Below, piece after piece: positions 157-60,076 of a stretch of DNA of 64,000 nucleotides. The stretch lies in the NCBI RefSeq assembly GCF_006345805.1, contig NC_043013.1:12462001-12526000 (forward strand). The letters run 5' to 3'. The notes under the pieces are model-generated. The model had not been told where the DNA came from. It saw only the letters and a list, made by a program, of their open reading frames with translations, and searched no databases. The translations under genes were made by a program, and so were the position numbers. Within the stretch, counting starts at the first letter, position 1; each line of letters starts with the position of its first letter. This stretch comes from Octopus sinensis (taxonomy: Eukaryota).

Positions 157-670
157 TGAGATTTACCTGCTATTTTTTGCAGATTGATTTACCATGCAGC
201 TAATTTGTAGTGTGTGTTTTAAGGGATGTTTGGCTGCTATTTCTAGCAGCTCTGGGACTACATTAATCCAGTGTCCTTCCTTTTCTTCATTTGTAGTATG
301 TGATTTAAATGAGATTTACCTGCTATTTCTAGCAGATTGAGTTACCATGTAGTCAATTTGTAGTGTTTTAAGAGATATCTGACTGGTATTTCTAGCAGCT
401 CCAGGACAACATTAATTCAATATGTCCTTTTTCTTAATTTGTAGTCTGTGATGTGAGATTTGGCTGCTGTTTCTAGCAGATTGAGTTACCATGTAGTCAG
501 TTAGTAGTATTTTAAGGGGTATTTGACTGCTATTTCTAGCAGCTCCAGGACTACATTAATCAAATATGTCCATCTTTTTCTTAATTTGTACCATGTAATT
601 TAAATGAGATTTGGCTGCTATTTCTAACAGATCTGAGACTACATTAATCCAGTGTGCCCTTCTTTCTTAA
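157..670 (+). repeat. Degenerate tandem repeat, ~150-bp unit x ~3.5, of a dispersed element (gagatttggctgctatttctagcag)
   Basis: Units start near 157, 310, 453 and 605. Related fragments at ~1338, ~21345-21700 (minus), ~24590 and ~57800-58030. Confidence 0.75.
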
Positions 671-9400: not shown

Positions 9401-10227
9401 TATTGAAATAAAGGCATGCTTAATTATTTTTTAATGAAAAGAAAACACTGATTGCTTTTTATTCAAGGAAGAAAATACTATTTTCTTGCTAATAAATGAT
9501 TTTTGTTGCCTTACAACTTTAAACCAAAAAAAGTGTGGTTTTTTAGTGAAAGAAAACCATTATTGCATTCAATCAAGATTGTTTGAGCTTTATTTCAAGG
9601 TGAATGTAGTCAAAATACTTCAATTTTAGAAACAAAGGACTATTTGCTTGCTTCTTAATCATGCAATATTTGCATTAAAATCGTTTTTCTTTGGACTAGA
9701 AAAAAGTCTATCTTTATTTCTTCTTTTGTTGGTGTCTCAAATTTAGGTTAAATCAGCATTTCTCAAAGGGGAGGCCTATGGGACGGTCGGACAAGTTGTT
9801 TTAAGAAAATTTGGTTTAAATCTTTGACAACTCAGCACCATGCATTGGATGGTGGGGTGTTTTGCTCATATATATATATACATATATGTATATATGATAA
9901 GACTTCTCAAACTTATCAGTAATTTGTCTGCATCCTTTCAAGAAATGTTTACGTTTGTTAGTATAAGCTCATAAAGCCCTGATGAGATTCTGCCCCATGA
10001 TGACCAATTTCTTAACATATGGCCCTACCTAAATGCTTAGAATTACTAATCACCTAGGGGCATAAATCGAGATATATATGTAGGTCTTTGGCATCTGCCA
10101 TTTCTTTTAGAGCTTTATAATTTGTAATTTATTTGTGTTGTTTTTATAAAAAAAACTTTCAACCTCTGTATATAATAAAAAAAAATTATTCAAACTTCAT
10201 AATCCTCCCTTTGCTTCCTTCCCATTA

Positions 10228-17744: not shown

Positions 17745-17802
17745 ATAGATAGATAGAGAGGTAGGTGGGTAAATAGATAGGTAAGTAGGTAGATAGATAG
17801 AG

Positions 17803-17833
<31 letters not shown>

Positions 17834-17860
17834 CAGATAGATAGTTAGATAGATATATAG

Positions 17861-17903
<43 letters not shown>

Positions 17904-17990
17904 TAGGTAGATAGATAGATACATAGGTAGGTAGATTGATAGATTAAATAGGTAGATTAGATAGATAGATAGATTAGATAGGTAGATAGT
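17745..17990. repeat. (GATA)n/(GA)n compound microsatellite
   Basis: Direct inspection. Confidence 0.9.
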
Positions 17991-25459: not shown

Positions 25460-25809
25460 ACGCTAACAACAACAACAACAGCAATACCAACAACATCAAC
25501 AACAATAACATCAAGAAAGGTGCAACATCATCATCATCATCAACAACAACAACAACATCAACAGTAGCAGATACTACGACAACAGCAATAACAACAACAA
25601 AACAAAGGATGGAGATGACGGTGGTGGTGGTGGTGGTGGTGGTGGTGGAGGCGGAGGAGGAGGCGGAGGAGAGGAAGAAGATGAAGAGAAGAAAAAGAAG
25701 GAGGTGATGGAGGAGGAGGAGAATATTGAGGAGTACCTTAACCGAAGTGACACCGCTGTCATTTACCCGCAGCCTGTCAGTGAACCTGATGAGGAAGATG
25801 ACACCGGAG
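25460..25809 (+). CDS. zfh1: zfh1/ZEB exon with the conserved IEEYLNRSDTAVIYP motif; apparent 1-nt frameshift as assembled
   Basis: Acceptor ccttctctattcAG (25459) and donor GGAG|GTAAAT (25810). The 3' part reads EENIEEYLNRSDTAVIYPQPVSE, resembling the vertebrate ZEB2 segment IEEYLQRSDTAIIYPE. The donor is phase 1, but the length of 350 nt is not a multiple of 3. Confidence 0.8.
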
Positions 25810-28142: not shown

Positions 28143-29852
28143 CCACCTCATCATTCTTATCACCATCATTGTCGTCATCATCATCATTATCATAATCATC
28201 ATCATAATCATCATCATCATCATCATAATAATCATCATCATTATCCTCATCATCATCATCATCATTATCCTCATCATCATAATAATCATCATCATCATCC
28301 TCATCATTTATGTATATTTATTTGCTTGAGTTGTGTGTGTGTATATGTGTGTGTGTAGATGGGTGTAAGCTTTATGCGTTTGTATGTTTACGTGCAATGT
28401 ATTTCTGTGTACATGTGTATGACTTGGGTTCTTTGGGGGGGGGTTTCGGGTATGTACACGTCCATGCACGAGTGTGTATATGCGCTTCTGTTTACATTTA
28501 GAATACAAGCATCTTTCTATGTGTATATATTTGCACTTCTACTCTATAGTTTTGCCTATATACATCTATGTATGTATTTGTGTAACCGCTTACTTGCGTA
28601 TGTCTGTTTATATTCGTTTTTTTTTTTACTGCGTGTATTTAAAAAAATTCCATGGTTATGTTTACATGTGCCTCACGTGTGTATATATATGTGTGTGTGT
28701 ATATTGAATTTGTTATGTCTAATCATGTATGTTTACTGTGTGTACATATGTCTGTTTCTACACCTTTGTCTATTCTAGATATAATCTGTATACATTTGTG
28801 TATCTGTATGTATGTGTGTGTATATATAAATATATATATATATATATTTATATATACACACACATATATATATATATATTTATATATACACACACAGTAG
28901 GTACAGACATACAAACAAACACACGTGAGCATACAAACAGAATATTTTGGAAGTATATATATATATATATATATACTCACGTGTGTTTGTTTGTATGTCT
29001 GTACCTACTTACCTGAAAATATCTGTAATGTATTTACTTATGTATGTGTATATATATATATGTATGTGTATATGTGTGTGTATAGATATATATATGTATA
29101 TGTATATATATATATATTCTTCTGAGAATGTTTGGAGCCATGTTTCTCAACTATTTTTTTTTCTTTTCACCTATGAACCCCTTTGGTTCCTCTTTTCCTC
29201 AGATGTTCCCTAGCTATTTAATGTTTAAAAATTCCCATCATATTTTTTTTATAAGAAAATATTATCAGGATTTGTATAAAAAGAAAATCGTTAAAATATT
29301 TTTTTGTGTATTGTAAAAATACAATCAATTAAACATAAGCTTTATCACAACAGAATCTTACATGGACCTCGAAGGATCATACCGATTTCGGTTAAGAACT
29401 ACTGAGCTAGGGGTTGTGTGTGATAGATGAATGTGTTTATCAGGGTAGTTGATAATCTGTACTTTCTTTTGTATCTCCTGTCTTCATCTCTGTATAATTC
29501 CTGTGTCTGATATATGTCTTAGTGTGTCTGCATACCTGTTCAACAAGGTATATTAATCTATGTGTACAATACATGTATATATATACCTGTCTACGTTTGT
29601 GTACATGTGCTTGCATAAGAACCCTATAACTACTCTTATCGACCAGTCTCCACTCGTTGTTGTTGCTTTCACTGTTTTCCTGTTTACCTGTAATCACTAT
29701 CACCTTGATTAATATCGGATCACTGATGTTCCATTGATTGAGTTATTTATCGGTTTATTTCTTACACACAAATTTACTTGTCTTATGAGTAATTATGTGC
29801 TCATTAGCTCAGCCATTTAATTATAGATGACTGTTAGTTACTTTTAATTTAG

Positions 29853-30228
29853 TACCTGTTAATGGTTTAACCTAAAGCATCCAATTAATTACCTCTCTCG
29901 TTATCGGTTACCTGGTAATTGCACCTGTTACCTGGTAGTTACAACTGTTACTTGGAATTTACACCTGATACATTATGCATTACCTATCTTGTTACCTGTT
30001 ACCTGAATTTACCTCTTGTTACTTGGTAATTTCAGCTATTACCTATTGCTGCAACTGTTACTCGGAATTTACACCTAATAACATGATAGTTATGCATTAC
30101 CTATCTCGTTTCCTGTTACCTTTGTTACTTGGTACTTGTACCTGTTAACCTATTACCTAGTTACACCTGTGTTATTACTGGTTAACAAGTTACATCTGTC
30201 TCACTGGATTGATTGCTTAGCTTACCTG
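29853..30228. promoter_or_regulatory. Degenerate TTACCTG-based tandem region with ten (C/T)ACCTG hexamers
   Basis: Sites at 29853, 29909, 29922, 29929, 29962, 29993, 30000, 30139, 30164 and 30223, all on the same strand. Includes an internal ~110-bp duplication (~29942 vs ~30052). Confidence 0.55.
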
Positions 30229-30485
30229 TCAGTGCATTTCCAACAGGGTGAGTGATGACAGGGAGTATTTGTAACTCAGCATGGAACAAATATAACAAAA
30301 GACCACTGATGTTTACATCATTCATCCCAGGGTTTCCATCCTTCATTCAACAAAAGATAGAAACTATCGGAACCCATTGCATGTGTGTGTGTATGATATT
30401 TGTCTCATTCTTCCGTTGGAGCAATGAGGGCCACCCAGTCGTCCTTAAGGATGCCTGATAACTTAAAGTGAATAAGAATTACATA

Positions 30486-30822
30486 CCTATTTCTTTACTA
30501 CCCACAAGGGGCTAAACACAGAGAGGACAAACAAGGGCAGACAAACGGATTAAGTCGATTATATCGACCCCAGTGCATAACTGGTACTTATTTAATCGAT
30601 CCCGATAGGATGAAAGGCAAAGTTGACCTCAGTGGAATTTGAACTCAGAACGTAGTGGCAGACAAAATACCACTAAGCATTTCGCCCGGCGGGCTAACGT
30701 TTCTGCCAGCTCACCACCTTGAAATCGACCTCGGCGGAATTTGAATTCAGAACATAAAGACAGACGAAATGCCACTAAGCAGTTCACCCGGCGGGCTAAC
30801 GTTTCTGCCAGCTCGCCGCCTT
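30486..30822 (-). mobile_element. tRNA-derived SINE family B (aaggcggcgagctggcagaaacgttagc type) with a duplicated head
   Basis: Reverse complement of 31248-31481; the head segment occurs twice (~30640-30720 and ~30720-30822). Confidence 0.88.
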
Positions 30823-31129
30823 AAGAATTACATACCATCAGCCTCACACTTTTGTCTATGACCATTTTCTGACCAGTGGCAAGACCAGGTCAAGACAACT
30901 GGTGATAGAGATGGATGCAGTGGCTGTCCAAGATGTCCTGCTTGCCTCGTCTCCTCATCTTACTTGCTCTGCACTCCACACAATGCATTCCTGCAGCTAC
31001 CTTCCTCTCTGTTGCACCACGAAGGATTTCTTCCTTGCAGAGTCTACCGGACCCTATCTTCACGTGCACAGGTCAGCAAGCTATGAGTGTCGTATGAAAA
31101 TATGTAGTTTCATACCCCATCGGTTACAA

Positions 31130-40430: not shown

Positions 40431-40771
40431 CACTTACCCTACAGTGTCTTTCTAAAAAAAATAGACAATCATATAATCAAAATTTCAAAACGAGATAATG
40501 CATGATTAATTCGGAACAATGTGAATAAATAAGAATTGCATTTGGCAGTAACTGGAATGTTAAAGGGTTACAGGCATTCTACCCAGGACCATTATTTTAA
40601 GACATTCAAGAGTGACTTGGAATAGGTTTTGCTGTTATTTCTGGTAAACTAAGTGACCACATAGAGGGGGTGTCTTGCTGCATTAATTTATGTCTGCATA
40701 GGAACCCTCTTTGGTTCCTATTTTATTTGGGTGAACCCTTATAACCATCTAGTGTTTTAAAAATCCTGTTA

Positions 40772-41139
40772 TCTCTCTATATATAAACGGCAAAATGTCT
40801 GTGTGCATGTCCTTTATACAAATCCACAATTTTTCAGTTAGAGGGCTCGCACTTTCTATGGTCATTCAAAACCGTCCAAGGATGGTCGTGCACATCTTTA
40901 CATTTCCCCAGTCACCCCGCAAAGCCATTAAAAGATCAATAGAAGTGACTTTTTTGTGAATTTTCTATCCAAAACCCAATCAAAATGCCCGAAACTTGAT
41001 ACGCCATTTGAAAGCTTGCTAGCTGTATGTGATTGGTCGGAGATTTGGACAGTACTCGCGTGTATATGCGCACGCACGCACGCAGCTGTATATGCATGCA
41101 CTAGCACTACGACCCGGCATTGCTGGATCATAGTGCTAG
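40772..41139 (+). mobile_element. Non-autonomous Helitron
   Basis: A|TC start, subterminal hairpin ccggcattgctgg, CTAG|T end. Inserted in an AT dinucleotide with no TSD. Confidence 0.82.
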
Positions 41140-41236
41140 TACTCTTATAATTCAGTATCATTATTTGGAATTGTATTAAAAAAAATTCTAATATTTGTTC
41201 ATCTCATTGCTCTTTGTCTTTTTTTCTTTTCTTCAG

Positions 41237-43734
41237 ATTCTGTGAATAATACCGATGATGAATATCTCTTGAAATGTATGCACTGCAAGGAATCTTTCAG
41301 TCAAGAATCTCGGTTGCATTCTCACATTAAAGCAATGCATTCAGAGAAGTCTGTGAAATTCATGTGTTCGAAATGCGAAGAGACATTTACGCTGAAATCC
41401 CAGCTTGATAACCATATGGAACTGCATTTGGCCACTTCACAGACTTGTACTGTCTGTAAGAAAACATTTGCCAATGTCTACCGACTTCAGCGCCACATGA
41501 TCAGCCACAATGAGAGCACATCGCTACGGAAATTTAAGTGCGAGGAATGTGGCAAAGCGTTCAAATTCAAACATCATCTCAAGGAACACATTCGTATTCA
41601 TTCTGGAGAGAAGCCTTTTGAATGTTCCAACTGCCGGAAACGGTTCAGCCACTCCGGTTCCTACAGCAGTCACATGACCTCCAAAAAATGCTGGGTCGTG
41701 AACATGAAGAGTCGTCGGATCGACCACAATGGTAACGCAGGTGACTCTGTTCCATATTCTCCGGCCTCTAAAAATGGACATAGCCAGTCGGCCATCTCTT
41801 TGCAAAAATCCTCAGGCAGTCTTCCACGACAATTAATTACATATGATAACCCCAACTCTAGCCTTCCAAAATTCTTTCCTAATGCTTCTTCATACATCTC
41901 ATATCCCATGTACCCTCAGAAGGAGAACCTTTCCGACAGAATCGCGCCACTAACCAACCAGACTATTGCACATTCTAATTCCTCAAAAGTATCTTTTAAT
42001 CAGAAGCCTTCTCTAACAAAAAATACAAAACTCTCACCTGACATGAACTCAAACATGCAGCCTTTATCGATGGTAGTCCTGAAGAAACCTGACAGTCCTG
42101 CCGTACCCTTGCAGTCACAAGTGACCTCTCCGCCTCTTGACGAACAAGTCATCAAAACTGAGCCATCAGACCAGTCGGAGGTCATCAAAGTTTTAAGTAG
42201 TGTCAATATTAAGAAGGAAAATTCTAAAGACGGTTTTCCAGTAACCGACGTCATGCAAGAGAAGCACTCCGATTCCCCTCCTCTTCCTCCATCCAACTTT
42301 GTAGATGCCAAAGATGTTGATCTCACATGCCGATTTTGTGCATCAGCCTTCCGCAGTCCTGTGGCACTGCACCAACATGAACGCTATCTATGCAAATCCA
42401 ACAAAGATATCGTGCATAGAGTTACCAACTTGGAGGTAACGTCGTGCAACAGTCCGAGTAGTACAACTTCCTCGTCGGAAATGATTAAACGCGAGACACC
42501 AAACGGCAGTTTGGAGAACGGCACCGATGAGGAGGAAGCAGAGGAAATTTTCAAAGAGGAAAACCTCGATAAGAAGTTCCGTATGCGTTCCATGATAAGC
42601 GACGACCAGCTGCAGGTTCTGAAGAAATATTACCAGCTCAACCCTCGACCTCGTAAACATGACCTGATAAAAATCGGCAATGAAATTGGTTTCCCGAAAC
42701 GCGTGGTGCAGGTTTGGTTTCAGAACATGAGAGCACGAGATCGTAAGAAAGGTAAAAATGTCCCGTATTTCCCCGCTATGGCTCGTTTCAAACAACAGGA
42801 GGATTCAGCAACCACGTCCTCCACATGGAAAGAGCCAGTAAAATCTACTAATTCGGCCTACATCCCTGTGGTTCCACATTTCAATAATTCTGTCCAAATT
42901 CCTTCTGGAATTCCACCATCATCATCGCCTTCATTTCCAGCTCATTCACATACAAAAGTAAACGGTCAGTTTAACGCTGCCACCGAAAACCGTGATGCCT
43001 TGTTCAATAACCAGGACCAACCTTTAGATCTTAGTCTGAAAAGAGAACCCCCCAGAGCTCACAGTGGCCACAAACCAGTCAGTAGCAATGCCTATAATTC
43101 CCATCCTCCTCCTGCTACTCCCAGTCAGAATTTTGATAACGAAGTTCTAAACCTAAGTTGCCGATCTCCTATCAGTGTCAAGCAAGAACATGTAGATGGC
43201 GCAAGCTCTGCTCAAAGTAGCTTCCAGGAATCTGCTCTGTATAAATATATGAAGCAAGAAGGAATGATTGTTAACAAGCCAGCCCTTAACCAAGACGCGA
43301 CCTCGTTAAGCAAGCTTTCCCATTCCAGTCCCATTCCAGCCGCGATGCAAGACTCTCTCACATCACCTTATCGCTCCAGTGGCAAATCCATTGCCAGTGG
43401 GGAGAACGAAAGCAAACCCAAAGTTCCAAAGTCTGAGTTGAAGCAGCCCGATGACTCGTCAATGTCAAGTGATGGTTCTATAGACAGCGTTAGTAATCGG
43501 TCTCTCGTCATTGACGAGAGTAAATTCCACAATGAGAAAAGCGACGGTGACTGTCTTTCTGATGATGATGATGAAGATGATGACGATTCCGACGAAGATG
43601 ATTCTCCACCAAGACTGTCAAATGGTTTGTCCGATGGTAATCTCACTCCTTCCAAGATGAGAGAAGACAACCATCAGACAAATCCAGATGGCACCAAAAA
43701 ACCAAAACGATTACGCAAGAAGTCTTGGAAACAG
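41237..43734 (+). CDS. zfh1: zfh1/ZEB large central exon: N-terminal zinc-finger cluster, isolated CCHC finger, homeodomain, CtBP motif
   Basis: Acceptor ttttcttcAG (41236) and donor CAG|GTTAGT (43735). It encodes four C2H2 fingers plus the ZEB-signature CCHC finger ([46 protein letters not shown]), a homeodomain at ~42571-42753 (VVQVWFQNMRAR), PLDLS at 43021-43035 and VLNLS at 43144-43158. Confidence 0.97.
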
Positions 43735-44282
43735 GTTAGTGTTTCTTTGGCTATTATTATGATTGTTGTCTTATCTACTAATTTCTAATTAACTTATTAA
43801 ATAAGATTTTACTTTGTCTTGTCTTCAAGTAGTATAGGTAGACTGATTGCACTTTGCACAATGGAAGTCATTTATTCTGATCACTTAATGTTATCAGTCA
43901 GTTATTGTTATCTAGAAGGCGCCATCTTAAAGTGATCACAATAAGCATTCTTCTAGCTTTCTCTCACTTTCTCTATCTATCTCTCTCTCATTCCCTCTCT
44001 GTGTGTATGTATATATGTAAACCAACTCATAAGCTCCATTGGTATTCTTCAGAAAATAAAGGGATTCTTGAATGCAGGAAGGCTGAGAACACAGCTTAGA
44101 AAATCAGTTAAATACCCTTAAAAGATAGTATGGGCAGCAAGCCTCCCCTGGGTATTTTCTGGTCATTTTTTTTTTCTATCTTCTAAAGGGTGTTTACCCT
44201 ATTTTCTAAGCTATCTTCACAGCCTTTCTGCATTCACAAATTTCTTTATTTATGTGGAATGTGTGTGTGTGTATCATTATCG

Positions 44283-44816: not shown

Positions 44817-45018
44817 CTAGTTCTCAACTATCTTTTTTTTTTTTTACCTATGGACCCTCTTTAGTTCCTATTTTACTTGGGTGAACCCTCATAACTATTT
44901 AGTGTTTTAAAAAGAAGTATAACCAATTATTGCACATGATTCTTACCAAGAAAATCTTTGGAACCCCCCTGCCCCCTCCCTCCCCGGGGGCCACATGGAT
45001 CCTGGTTGAGAACCACTG
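44817..45018. mobile_element. hAT-like MITE (CAGTGGTTCTCAACC-type TIR)
   Basis: Left end CTAGTTCTCAACT, right end GGTTGAGAACCACTG. No clear TSD. Confidence 0.65.
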
Positions 45019-52875: not shown

Positions 52876-53248
52876 AAAAGAATATGTATTCACACACGCA
52901 CACAAACACACATACACGCATACTCCTGTACCCTTTTCTTCAATTACTATAGTAAAACTGATCACAGCCTTTACTATATACTCTTTTATCTCGTAGTTAA
53001 CCATCTTTCCATTTTATTTTCTATACTTCTTACTGCCTGCTTGTTTTGCAATTTTATATATTTGTTATTAGTCTTTATTTAGTATATTTTTATATTTTAT
53101 TTGTTATATATTCGTTTAAATTGCTTTAACACTGTGTTTTTGCCCGCCCGCCTACCCTCCCAGTCCCTTGCTTTGCCAACTAACCAACAATATATTAAAA
53201 AAGCTATTTCTAACTTTTTAAAAGAGTCTACCCTGTATTGCATGGCAG

Positions 53249-53441
53249 ATGGCATCGGAAGAAATCCAGCTCGACCTCGAAGAGACAAATACGGTCGATG
53301 AAGATCACCCACATAGGAAAAAACGCCGATCTTGGAAGAATCATCGAGTCGACGTAGAGGAAGGCTTATATGCTTGCGATCAATGTGATAAAATGTTTAG
53401 CAAGCAGAGTTCACTTGCTAGGCATAAATACGAACATTCAG
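53249..53441 (+). CDS. zfh1: zfh1/ZEB exon with the first finger of the C-terminal cluster
   Basis: Phase-0 acceptor ggcAG (53248) matches the donor at 43735. Encodes [26 protein letters not shown]. Donor CAG|GTAAAA at 53442 is phase 1. Confidence 0.95.
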
Positions 53442-53600
53442 GTAAAAACTAGCATTTGATGACCTCTGTGAGGGGGGGGGGAATGTACATATGCAGTGTT
53501 TGGTGAATGTCTTGGATAGGTTGTATGAGAAGGAGGTGAGGTTTTGTGGTGGTGGTAGTAAAAAGTAATAGATAATTCAAGGAAGAGGAAAAAAGATGAG

Positions 53601-59575: not shown

Positions 59576-59852
59576 TATATATAGTGTAGTACTGTTTCTA
59601 CCTTGCCAATTTTCACCAATCGTGGGGCGAGGTTTAGAAAGTAACACCCGTAATAGTCGAGGGGTTATTGTATATATGTAACAGTTTGTAATTCCACCCT
59701 TTTTTTGTCTCCTCTCATTTCTGTATTATCTTCCTGTCTTCTGCCCCTAAAAGTATACATCCCACTGCTTCCTTTTCCATTGAACTTGTTCACTAATACT
59801 TGTGTCTTTTCTTTTCTTTTCACATGTTCCTGAATCTTCCCCCCACTGGCAG

Positions 59853-60076
59853 GAGCACGTCCGTTTGTGTGCGATGAGTGCCCGAAGGCGTTCAAACACA
59901 AGCACCACCTAACCGAACACAAGCGGCTGCACAGCGGTGAAAAACCATTCCAGTGCAAGAAGTGCTCCAAGCGCTTCAGTCATTCTGGTTCTTACAGCCA
60001 ACACATGAATCACCGCTACAAATACTGCAAACCACCGAAGCATGACGAGGAGGAAGACATCGGCGCGAATGAGTGA
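59853..60076 (+). CDS. zfh1: zfh1/ZEB terminal coding exon with the last two C2H2 fingers and stop
   Basis: Phase-1 acceptor cccactggcAG (59852). Encodes (G)[55 protein letters not shown], with TGA at 60074-60076. Confidence 0.97.

What the first reader, a model, noticed from the sequence alone, without database searches (positions are those of the whole stretch)
29533..30228. Dense homotypic cluster of ZEB-type sites inside the ZEB gene's own intron
Seen: ten TACCTG/CACCTG hexamers in 29853-30228, plus three more at 29533, 29584 and 29685, all on one strand. They sit in a degenerate TTACCTG repeat that matches none of the dispersed families here. Established: ZEB/Zfh1 finger clusters bind CAGGT(G/A), and C. 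elegans ZAG-1 represses its own gene through intronic sites. Inference: a repeat-expanded negative-autoregulation silencer. Alternative: TTACCTG in the sense pre-mRNA is complementary to CAG|GTAA 5' splice sites (like the U1 5' end), so it could act at the RNA level or mark antisense donors.
Basis: partly seen in the sequence, partly recalled or inferred. Interest (0 to 1): 0.72.

Follow-up and report, generated by a model that had tools for sequence, protein, structure and literature searches.

The report
Decaying minisatellite in octopus ZEB intron
The cluster of ZEB-type binding motifs is real and does sit in an intron of the octopus ZEB gene, but it is made by a short tandem repeat that amplified and is now decaying, and nothing yet shows it works as a regulatory switch.

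Summary
There are 13 YACCTG hexamers at exactly the stated positions, all on the + strand and none on the other; shuffles give about 1. The window is Octopus sinensis chromosome CM016875.1. The gene is its ZEB/Zfh1 homologue, on the + strand, and the cluster lies in the 15.4-kb intron between the 'EEYLNRSDTAVIYP' exon and the large zinc-finger/homeodomain exon.

The cluster is a degenerate minisatellite with core GTTACCT, about 20-nt subunits and three higher-order copies of about 91-117 nt. Of 26 TTAC-anchored units, 10 keep YACCTG and 16 are one-mismatch derivatives. No site position is intact in all three higher-order copies.

The whole orthologous intron of another coleoid has no such cluster. 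Outside the array the octopus locus is not enriched for the motif.

My best reading is a lineage-specific, probably neutral repeat whose motif density is a by-product of amplification.

One caveat: the blood clam Tegillarca granosa ZEB gene also has an intronic, sense-strand TTACCTG-core minisatellite with 56 sites. This is suggestive but within reach of chance, because that locus holds about 20 minisatellites.

Genome-wide copy number and conservation in other octopods could not be tested.

The parts
29860..30232 (+). Degenerate minisatellite with core GTTACCT(G). It has 26 TTAC-anchored units and carries 10 exact YACCTG hexamers (one, at 29853, lies just before this start) and 16 one-mismatch derivatives.
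29860..29972 (+). Higher-order copy 1. Sites at 29909, 29922, 29929 and 29962; the site at 29853 lies just upstream.
   Evidence: (families D8 and D9)
29973..30089 (+). Higher-order copy 2, starting TTATGCATTACCTATCT. Sites at 29993 and 30000. The positions homologous to the copy-1 sites read TACTTG, CTCTTG and CACCTA.
30090..30232 (+). Higher-order copy 3 plus the decayed 3' margin. Sites at 30139, 30164 and 30223.
29907..29971 (+). Run of 20-nt subunits with consensus GTTACCTGGTAATTACACCT. It includes the near-palindrome TTACCTGGTAA.
29533..29690 (+). Three outlying TACCTGT sites at 29533, 29584 and 29685. The last lies in a small TTTCCTGT x3 repeat at 29667-29691. They are probably an older, more decayed margin of the same array (inference).
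   Evidence: D13
25707..25808 (+). Upstream ZEB exon ('EEYLNRSDTAVIYPQPVSEPDEEDDTG'), with donor GAG|GTAAAT. The reading frame stays open back to at least 25518.
41230..43737 (+). Large ZEB exon encoding the N-terminal C2H2 fingers and the homeodomain. It marks the downstream end of the host intron.
30473..30836 (+). SINE-like insertion flanked by a perfect 15-nt target-site duplication (TAAGAATTACATACC). It bounds the unique segment that holds the array.
   Evidence: D12, D6

Best explanation
The cluster is a lineage-specific intronic minisatellite. A short unit with core GTTACCT(G) was amplified by replication slippage or unequal exchange into subunits of about 20 nt. A block of about 100 nt of these subunits was then triplicated. 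Because the unit happens to contain TACCTG/CACCTG, amplification automatically produced a dense, one-strand cluster of ZEB-type hexamers. The copies have since drifted apart, about 20-25% between higher-order copies, and have lost and kept sites without any visible preference. The orientation is the tolerated one for a + strand gene, because the opposite orientation would place about 10 CAG|GTAA donor-like sequences in the pre-mRNA. No dedicated regulatory function is needed to explain the sequence. Shown: the repeat anatomy, the site decay, the absence from another coleoid's orthologous intron, and the lack of motif enrichment elsewhere in the locus. Inferred: neutrality, the slippage mechanism and the orientation argument.
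For: - Hierarchical tandem structure: TRF periods 20 and 117, repeat families D3, D5, D8 and D9, and the alignment of three higher-order copies.
- Site decay: 26 related units, only 10 with exact YACCTG and 16 with one mismatch (TACTTG x4, TACCTA x4, TACCTC x2, CAACTG x2 and others).
- No retention by position: none of the 9 site columns in the alignment is intact in all three higher-order copies, and only one is shared by two.
- All sites point one way, as tandem amplification predicts.
- The window is full of comparable arrays: 425 TRF rows, and 25 loci where a complex hexamer occurs 6 or more times per 400 bp. One example is AGATAG x28 at 17.7 kb, which would read as a 'GATA cluster'.
- The complete orthologous intron in another coleoid (L002 1906-9563, 7.66 kb) has 5 + and 5 - sites, at most 3 per 400 bp, zero TTACCT and no unit match.
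- Outside the array the octopus locus has 60 sites against about 73 expected under a first-order Markov model, with no cluster beyond chance, and both hexamers rank near the 1000th of 2080.
- CAGGTR is depleted on the sense strand, 17 observed against 30.6 expected, which fits selection against donor-like hexamers.
Against: - Composition-matched control motifs rarely cluster in this window. Only 0.3-1.7% of 360 permutations of the motif letters reach 6 to 10 or more sites per 400 bp, so the match to the host gene's own motif is not trivial for this window taken alone.
- A second molluscan ZEB gene (Tegillarca granosa, intron 1) has an independent sense-strand minisatellite with a TTACCTG core and 56 sites. 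A crude null gives P(2 or more of 6 loci) = 0.055.
- Neutrality is inferred, not measured. There are no data from congeneric octopods, populations or chromatin.
Confidence: 0.7

Rival explanations
1. The repeat-expanded array is a ZEB-binding platform, acting as a negative-autoregulation silencer or as a local sink, through which the octopus ZEB protein controls its own gene.
For: - There are 13 cognate hexamers, 3 E-box CACCTG and 10 Z-box TACCTG, in 700 bp of the gene's own intron.
- Both hexamers are bound by vertebrate ZEB1 (PMC2396950), and bipartite CACCT(G) binding is described in PMC10048071.
- ZEB autoregulation exists in worm (negative, PMC4256384) and in mouse (positive, promoter-proximal, PMC10048071).
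- The composition-matched coincidence is rare in this window.
- There is a parallel TTACCTG minisatellite in the clam ZEB intron 1.
Against: - Sites are not preferentially retained.
- They share a single orientation and a tandem origin.
- The cluster is absent from the orthologous intron of another coleoid.
- It is absent from four of the five other molluscan ZEB loci examined.
- The candidate non-repetitive E-box/Z-box modules seen in Pinctada, Lottia and Tegillarca are compact and of mixed orientation, unlike this array.
- The finding was picked out of a large scan because the motif matched, so the single-window p-value is inflated.
- There are no binding, chromatin or expression data.
Confidence: 0.12
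2. The array is the internal tandem-repeat region of a dispersed mobile element or satellite family that landed in the intron. Under this reading it is equally non-functional but did not arise locally.
For: - The segment is embedded among dispersed repeats. 29144-29231 has a copy at 44821-44912, and a SINE with target-site duplications sits at 30473-30836.
- Many invertebrate mobile elements carry internal minisatellites (background knowledge).
Against: - There is no second copy in the 64-kb window or in the extra 6 kb of L001.
- No flanking terminal inverted repeats or target-site duplications around 29.5-30.25 kb appear among the reported repeats.
- No related ORF was found among 1.84 billion protein representatives, apart from one spurious hit.
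- There was no match in metagenome contigs.
- These last two searches are weak tests, because octopus genomic ORFs are barely represented in those collections.
Confidence: 0.13
3. This is an RNA-level role. The sense-strand UUACCUG repeats, which are complementary to CAG|GUAA and resemble the U1 snRNA 5' end, would pair with 5' splice sites or sequester splicing factors. Alternatively, the antisense strand would supply a battery of splice donors for an antisense transcript.
For: - TTACCTG is the exact complement of the exon-3 donor CAG|GTAA at 53440-53446, and TTACCTC is nearly the complement of the exon-A donor GAG|GTAA.
- The array sits on the transcribed strand.
Against: - Any reverse-complemented 5' splice-site consensus has this property.
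- There is no stable or unusual RNA fold: z = -0.65, and 22 of 100 shuffles fold as well.
- There is no Rfam match in the array.
- The antisense donors read GTAAC, a weak +5 position.
- There is no evidence of an antisense transcript.
- The array is absent from the other coleoid.
Confidence: 0.03

Closest known systems
Intronic minisatellites (VNTR-type tandem repeats with higher-order structure)
   Same: Head-to-tail copies of a 7-20 nt unit, a higher-order periodicity of about 100 nt, a single orientation, degeneration of copies, an intronic location, and lineage specificity.
   Different: The array is short, about 370 bp, and already heavily degenerate, with 80% or lower identity between copies. 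Copy-number polymorphism, the defining property of a VNTR, could not be examined.
Repeat-derived homotypic clusters of transcription-factor sites (tandem repeats that act as binding platforms)
   Same: A tandem repeat whose unit contains a consensus site for a transcription factor, giving a dense homotypic cluster.
   Different: No binding, chromatin or reporter evidence exists here, and sites decay without preference. Resemblance to such systems is by sequence only. The comparison itself rests on background knowledge and was not tested.
ZEB-family autoregulatory elements (C. elegans zag-1 own-promoter repression; mouse Zeb2 promoter-proximal site)
   Same: Cognate CACCT(G)/CAGGTA motifs within the factor's own locus.
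   Different: The described elements are promoter or promoter-proximal (PMC4256384, PMC10048071), not a mid-gene intronic repeat. The mouse element is activating. The known sites are few and non-repetitive.
Tegillarca granosa ZEB intron-1 minisatellite (L006 15280-16939)
   Same: A sense-strand tandem repeat with a TTACCTG core inside an intron of the ZEB homologue.
   Different: The unit differs (16 nt, GATTTACCTGCCCCTA), the intron differs (intron 1), and the array is much younger and longer, with 103 copies and 56 sites. Half of the units read TTAACCTG, which is not a site. There is no sequence homology beyond the core.

Membership tests
Minisatellite / tandem repeat | Head-to-tail copies of a unit of 7 nt or more, detected above chance | tested here: met
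   TRF gives period 20 (3.2 copies, 82%) and period 117 (1.9 copies, 80%). The 25-nt unit pattern matches 5 times against 0.01 expected. There are 26 TTAC-anchored units.
Minisatellite / tandem repeat | All copies in one orientation, with hierarchical (higher-order) periodicity | tested here: met
   All 13 sites are on the + strand. Three higher-order copies align.
Minisatellite / tandem repeat | Copy-number variation between individuals or close species | not testable with these tools
   No second octopod assembly or population data could be reached. The Logan contigs of a congener (L003 and L004) cover only the large exon.
ZEB/Zfh1 autoregulatory cis-element | Cognate motifs CACCT(G)/CAGGTA in the factor's own locus, including at least one CACCTG | tested here: met
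   There are 3 CACCTG and 10 TACCTG in the ZEB intron. The motif definitions come from PMC2396950 and PMC10048071.
ZEB/Zfh1 autoregulatory cis-element | Sites maintained by selection: retained across paralogous repeat copies and in orthologous introns | tested here: not met
   No site column is intact in all three higher-order copies. There are 16 decayed derivatives. The cluster is absent from the orthologous intron of another coleoid. Congeneric octopods were not tested.
ZEB/Zfh1 autoregulatory cis-element | Occupancy by ZEB protein and ZEB-dependent repression | not testable with these tools
   This needs CUT&RUN or ChIP, EMSA, or a reporter assay.
Dispersed repeat / transposable element | Multiple copies at unrelated loci | tested here: inconclusive
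   There is no other copy in 70 kb of O. sinensis sequence. ORF-based and pattern searches of public collections found nothing, but these collections hardly sample octopus genomes.
Dispersed repeat / transposable element | Terminal inverted repeats or target-site duplications bounding the segment | tested here: not met
   The repeat finder on 28900-30900 shows target-site duplications only for the neighbouring SINE (D12). Among the 25 longest inverted repeats listed, out of 83, none flanks the array.
Structured or U1-like regulatory RNA | Stable or conserved secondary structure, or a match to a known RNA family | tested here: not met
   The fold z-score is -0.65. There is no Rfam hit inside 29500-30300 at E of 1 or below.

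The most novel reading that the evidence does not exclude
Sense-oriented TTACCTG-core minisatellites have arisen independently in introns of ZEB genes of distant molluscs, an octopus and an ark clam. They are kept because arrays of Z-box/E-box sites give the ZEB protein a tunable, copy-number-dependent handle or sink on its own gene. That would be autoregulation evolving by repeat expansion.
Probability: 0.1. Interest if true: 0.7.

Novelty: new member of a known kind. Interest (0 to 1): 0.3.

Why it matters
If the ordinary reading is right, this is a cautionary example. In repeat-rich cephalopod introns, tandem amplification alone produces dense 'homotypic clusters' of credible transcription-factor sites, such as the YACCTG cluster here and the AGATAG cluster at 17.7 kb. 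Motif density without conservation or occupancy should therefore not be read as regulation.

If the minority reading is right, it would show a transcription factor gaining autoregulatory input through expansion of a minisatellite, possibly more than once in molluscs. It would also give a simple, testable case in an animal group where cis-regulatory logic is almost unexplored.

Tried and rejected
1. I looked for the orthologous or dispersed copies through spurious ORFs. Exact look-ups of the 57-aa and 87-aa ORFs were not on record. The word-indexed homology search with the 87-aa flank ORF found no candidate. The exhaustive search of 1.84 billion representatives with the 57-aa repeat ORF gave one hit, P0125, an unrelated real repeat protein.
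2. A metagenome-contig scan with the degenerate 25-nt unit gave 0 hits.
3. O. bimaculoides proteins (P0122, P0123) have no contig on record. The Logan contigs of a related Octopus (L003, L004; 95.6% exon and 88% intron identity) cover only the large exon.
4. A sensitive blastn of the octopus intron against the other coleoid's locus gave only low-complexity TA/TG matches and no conserved non-coding element.
5. The Rfam scan gave only sub-threshold miRNA-family hits on a TA/TG hairpin at 28.8-29.1 kb, and nothing in the array.
6. The RNA fold of the array was not different from shuffles.
7. A PDB sequence search of the protein gave only generic C2H2 matches and nothing specific to ZEB.
8. Look-ups of isoform-X2 proteins of Haliotis and Liolophura were not on record.
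9. I left the third homology search unused, because two ORF-based attempts had already failed and indels at 88% intron identity make a hit unlikely.
10. My first crude look-elsewhere estimate, 13% for this window, is too lenient. Composition-matched controls give 0.3-1.7%. I report both.

Full report
**Observation.**
There are ten YACCTG hexamers in 29853-30228, at 29853, 29909, 29922, 29929, 29962, 29993, 30000, 30139, 30164 and 30223. Three more lie at 29533, 29584 and 29685. All are on the + strand, and CAGGTR does not occur on that strand in the region. Ten are TACCTG and three are CACCTG.

Dinucleotide-preserving shuffles give 0.78 +/- 0.84 sites (max 6) for the 376-bp core and 0.97 (max 5) for the 696-bp span. 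No other place in the window reaches 5 sites per 400 bp.

**Context.**
Window 15707-64000 is 100% identical to Octopus sinensis GCA_006345805.1 CM016875.1. The 848-aa ORF at 41242-43788 has C2H2 fingers and a homeodomain. It is 99% identical to XP_029647147.1, 'zinc finger protein 1-like'. The O. bimaculoides members of the same 90% cluster are named ZEB2-like and zag-1.

tblastn places the exons at about 25707-25808, 41230-43737, 53240-53443 and 59849-60076 on the + strand.

**Anatomy.**
TRF reports a period-20 array (GTTACCTGGTAATTACACCT, 29907-29971) nested in a period-117 array (29907-30121, 80% matches). The repeat finder shows seven copies of a 29-nt subunit and three copies of the block TTATGCATTACCTATCTYGTT.CCTGTTACCT, starting at 29882, 29973 and 30090. 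The three higher-order copies align with 61% mean column identity.

Splitting at TTAC-type anchors gives 26 units between 29867 and 30232. Ten contain exact YACCTG. Sixteen contain one-mismatch derivatives: TACTTG x4, TACCTA x4, TACCTC x2, CAACTG x2, and CACCTA, CATCTG, TACCTT and TTCCTG once each.

In the alignment of higher-order copies, none of the nine site columns is intact in all three copies, and only one is shared by two. So about four ancestral sites per block were multiplied by block triplication, and sites have since been lost and kept without visible preference. The single orientation is what tandem amplification produces.

blastn finds no other copy of 29100-30450 in the window. 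A SINE-like insertion with a perfect 15-nt target-site duplication lies immediately downstream, at 30473-30836.

**How unusual is it?**
The window is very repeat-rich, with 425 TRF rows. In 25 loci some complex hexamer occurs 6 or more times per 400 bp. AGATAG x28 at 17.7 kb is one, and would equally read as a 'GATA cluster'.

If enriched hexamers were random draws, the chance that one of the four ZEB hexamers is among them would be 13%. A stricter control uses 360 permutations of the motif's own letters. Under it, only 0.3-1.7% of composition-matched motifs cluster this way in the window. The match is therefore uncommon for a single window. However, the finding was selected from a scan precisely because the motif matched the gene, so that p-value cannot be taken at face value.

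**Conservation.**
A 425-kb ENA contig (L002) comes from another coleoid, with 65% amino-acid identity over the large exon. It contains both flanking exons: the 'LQEYLNRSDTAVIFPQPVSDQDDDDDTG' exon ends near L002 1905, and the large exon starts at 9564.

The complete 7.66-kb orthologous intron has 5 + and 5 - sites, at most 3 per 400 bp, no TTACCT at all and no match to the repeat unit. No alignable conserved element was found. The cluster is therefore lineage-specific at this distance.

Closer octopods could not be reached. The divergence between higher-order copies, about 20-25%, exceeds the 12% intronic divergence to the Octopus species behind L003. From this I predict, by inference, that the array predates that split and should be present there in altered form.

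**Rest of the locus.**
With the array masked, the window has 60 sites on both strands against about 73 expected under a first-order Markov model, and no cluster beyond chance. Both hexamers rank near the middle of all 2080.

YACCTG on the sense strand is exactly at expectation, 43 against 43.2. CAGGTR on the sense strand is depleted, 17 against 30.6. This fits avoidance of donor-like hexamers in a long-intron gene, and it means the array lies in the tolerated orientation.

**Other molluscan ZEB loci.**
I fetched Lottia (L005), Tegillarca granosa (L006), Pinctada imbricata (L007) and Elysia (L008). Four of the five non-octopus loci have no dense one-strand cluster.

Tegillarca does. It has a 1.66-kb minisatellite in intron 1 (L006 15280-16939) of 103 copies of GATTTACCTGCCCCTA. 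The array carries 56 exact YACCTG, all on the sense strand, and about half the units read TTAACCTG instead. The core and orientation match the octopus array, but the unit and the intron differ.

That locus carries about 20 unrelated minisatellites, and 10-21% of composition-matched motifs cluster there. As an independent replicate it is therefore worth roughly p = 0.1-0.2, or 0.05-0.1 if orientation is counted. The crude joint estimate for 2 or more of 6 loci is 0.055. This is suggestive, not compelling.

Separately, Pinctada (L007 4146-4272, next to a GC box about 730 bp upstream of the annotated CDS start), Lottia (L005 10444-10587) and Tegillarca (L006 12649-12890 and others) have compact, non-repetitive, mixed-orientation clusters of 5-7 sites. 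None was reached in 60 simulations. CACCTG is among the top 1% of hexamers against the Markov-1 expectation in L002, L005 and L006. These clusters look more like conventional E-box/Z-box modules, and the octopus array does not resemble them. Without same-genome control loci their specificity is unknown.

**Literature.**
- ZEB1 binds E-box CAGGTG and Z-box CAGGTA (PMC2396950).
- ZEB factors bind bipartite CACCT(G) (PMC10048071).
[quoted passage not shown] The text I could read does not mention intronic sites.
- Mouse Zeb2 binds promoter-proximally to itself and potentiates its own expression (PMC10048071).

**RNA-level alternative.**
TTACCTG is complementary to the exon-3 donor CAG|GTAA, but this is true of any reverse-complemented donor consensus. 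The array RNA folds no better than shuffles (z = -0.65), and there is no Rfam match in it.

**Verdict.**
The most economical explanation is a lineage-specific, decaying intronic minisatellite whose unit happens to contain the ZEB hexamer (confidence about 0.7). The repeat-expanded autoregulatory silencer is not excluded (about 0.1), and the clam parallel keeps it alive. It currently lacks any support from site retention, orthologous conservation or locus-wide motif enrichment. Genome-wide copy number and conservation in congeners remain the decisive untested points.

Noticed in passing
L006 15280-16939 (Tegillarca granosa ZEB locus, intron 1): A 1.66-kb minisatellite of 103 copies of GATTTACCTGCCCCTA, alternating with GATTAACCTGYCCCTA. 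It carries 56 exact YACCTG, all on the sense strand of the clam ZEB gene. The TTACCTG core and the orientation match the octopus array. The locus also holds about 20 unrelated minisatellites.
   Followed up: partly
L007 4146-4272; L005 10444-10587; L006 12649-12890, 14648-14829, 50310-50438: Compact, non-repetitive, mixed-orientation clusters of 5-7 YACCTG/CAGGTR sites in the Pinctada, Lottia and Tegillarca ZEB loci. The Pinctada cluster sits next to a GC box about 730 bp upstream of the annotated CDS start. None was reached in 60 Markov-1 simulations. These are possible genuine E-box/Z-box modules.
   Followed up: partly
L002, L005, L006 (whole loci): CACCTG/CAGGTG is 2-3-fold over the Markov-1 expectation and ranks 15th, 2nd and 23rd of 2080 hexamers in the ZEB loci of the other coleoid, Lottia and Tegillarca. 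It is not enriched in the octopus window. No same-genome control loci were available.
   Followed up: partly
window, whole (array masked): CAGGTR, which resembles a 5' splice site, is depleted on the sense strand: 17 observed against 30.6 expected. Its complement YACCTG is at expectation: 43 against 43.2. This fits avoidance of cryptic donors in a long-intron gene.
   Followed up: partly
window 25518-25808: The reading frame of the 'EEYLNRSD' exon stays open at least 190 nt upstream of the annotated ATG at 25707. Another coleoid's transcript-derived protein (P0002) has about 180 more N-terminal residues, including an MAEMARCGRRKQ first exon that I did not find in the window. The NCBI model is probably truncated at the 5' end.
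   Followed up: partly
window 17745-17989: An AGATAG/TAGGTA tetranucleotide-derived array with 28 AGATAG per 400 bp. This is a repeat-made 'GATA-site cluster', and a useful control showing how easily repeats mimic homotypic clusters of transcription-factor sites here.
   Followed up: no
window 30473-30836: A SINE-like insertion with a perfect 15-nt target-site duplication (TAAGAATTACATACC) and an internal duplication of about 101 nt (30620-30720 and 30722-30822, 85%). It looks recent.
   Followed up: no
window 28900-29005: A near-perfect hairpin with 34-nt arms (97% complementary) and a 38-nt loop, inside TA/TG-rich low-complexity DNA. It gives only sub-threshold Rfam miRNA-family hits (best 59 bits against a gathering score of 100).
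   Followed up: no
window 40693-41193 vs L003/L004: Genomic contigs of a related Octopus species (95.6% exon identity) lack about 500 bp that O. sinensis has just upstream of the large exon. This is an indel, probably a repeat insertion in O. sinensis.
   Followed up: no
window 157-637: A 144-nt tandem repeat (3.2 copies) whose unit contains GATTTACCTGC. The same 11-mer is found in the clam 16-nt unit. This is probably coincidence.
   Followed up: no
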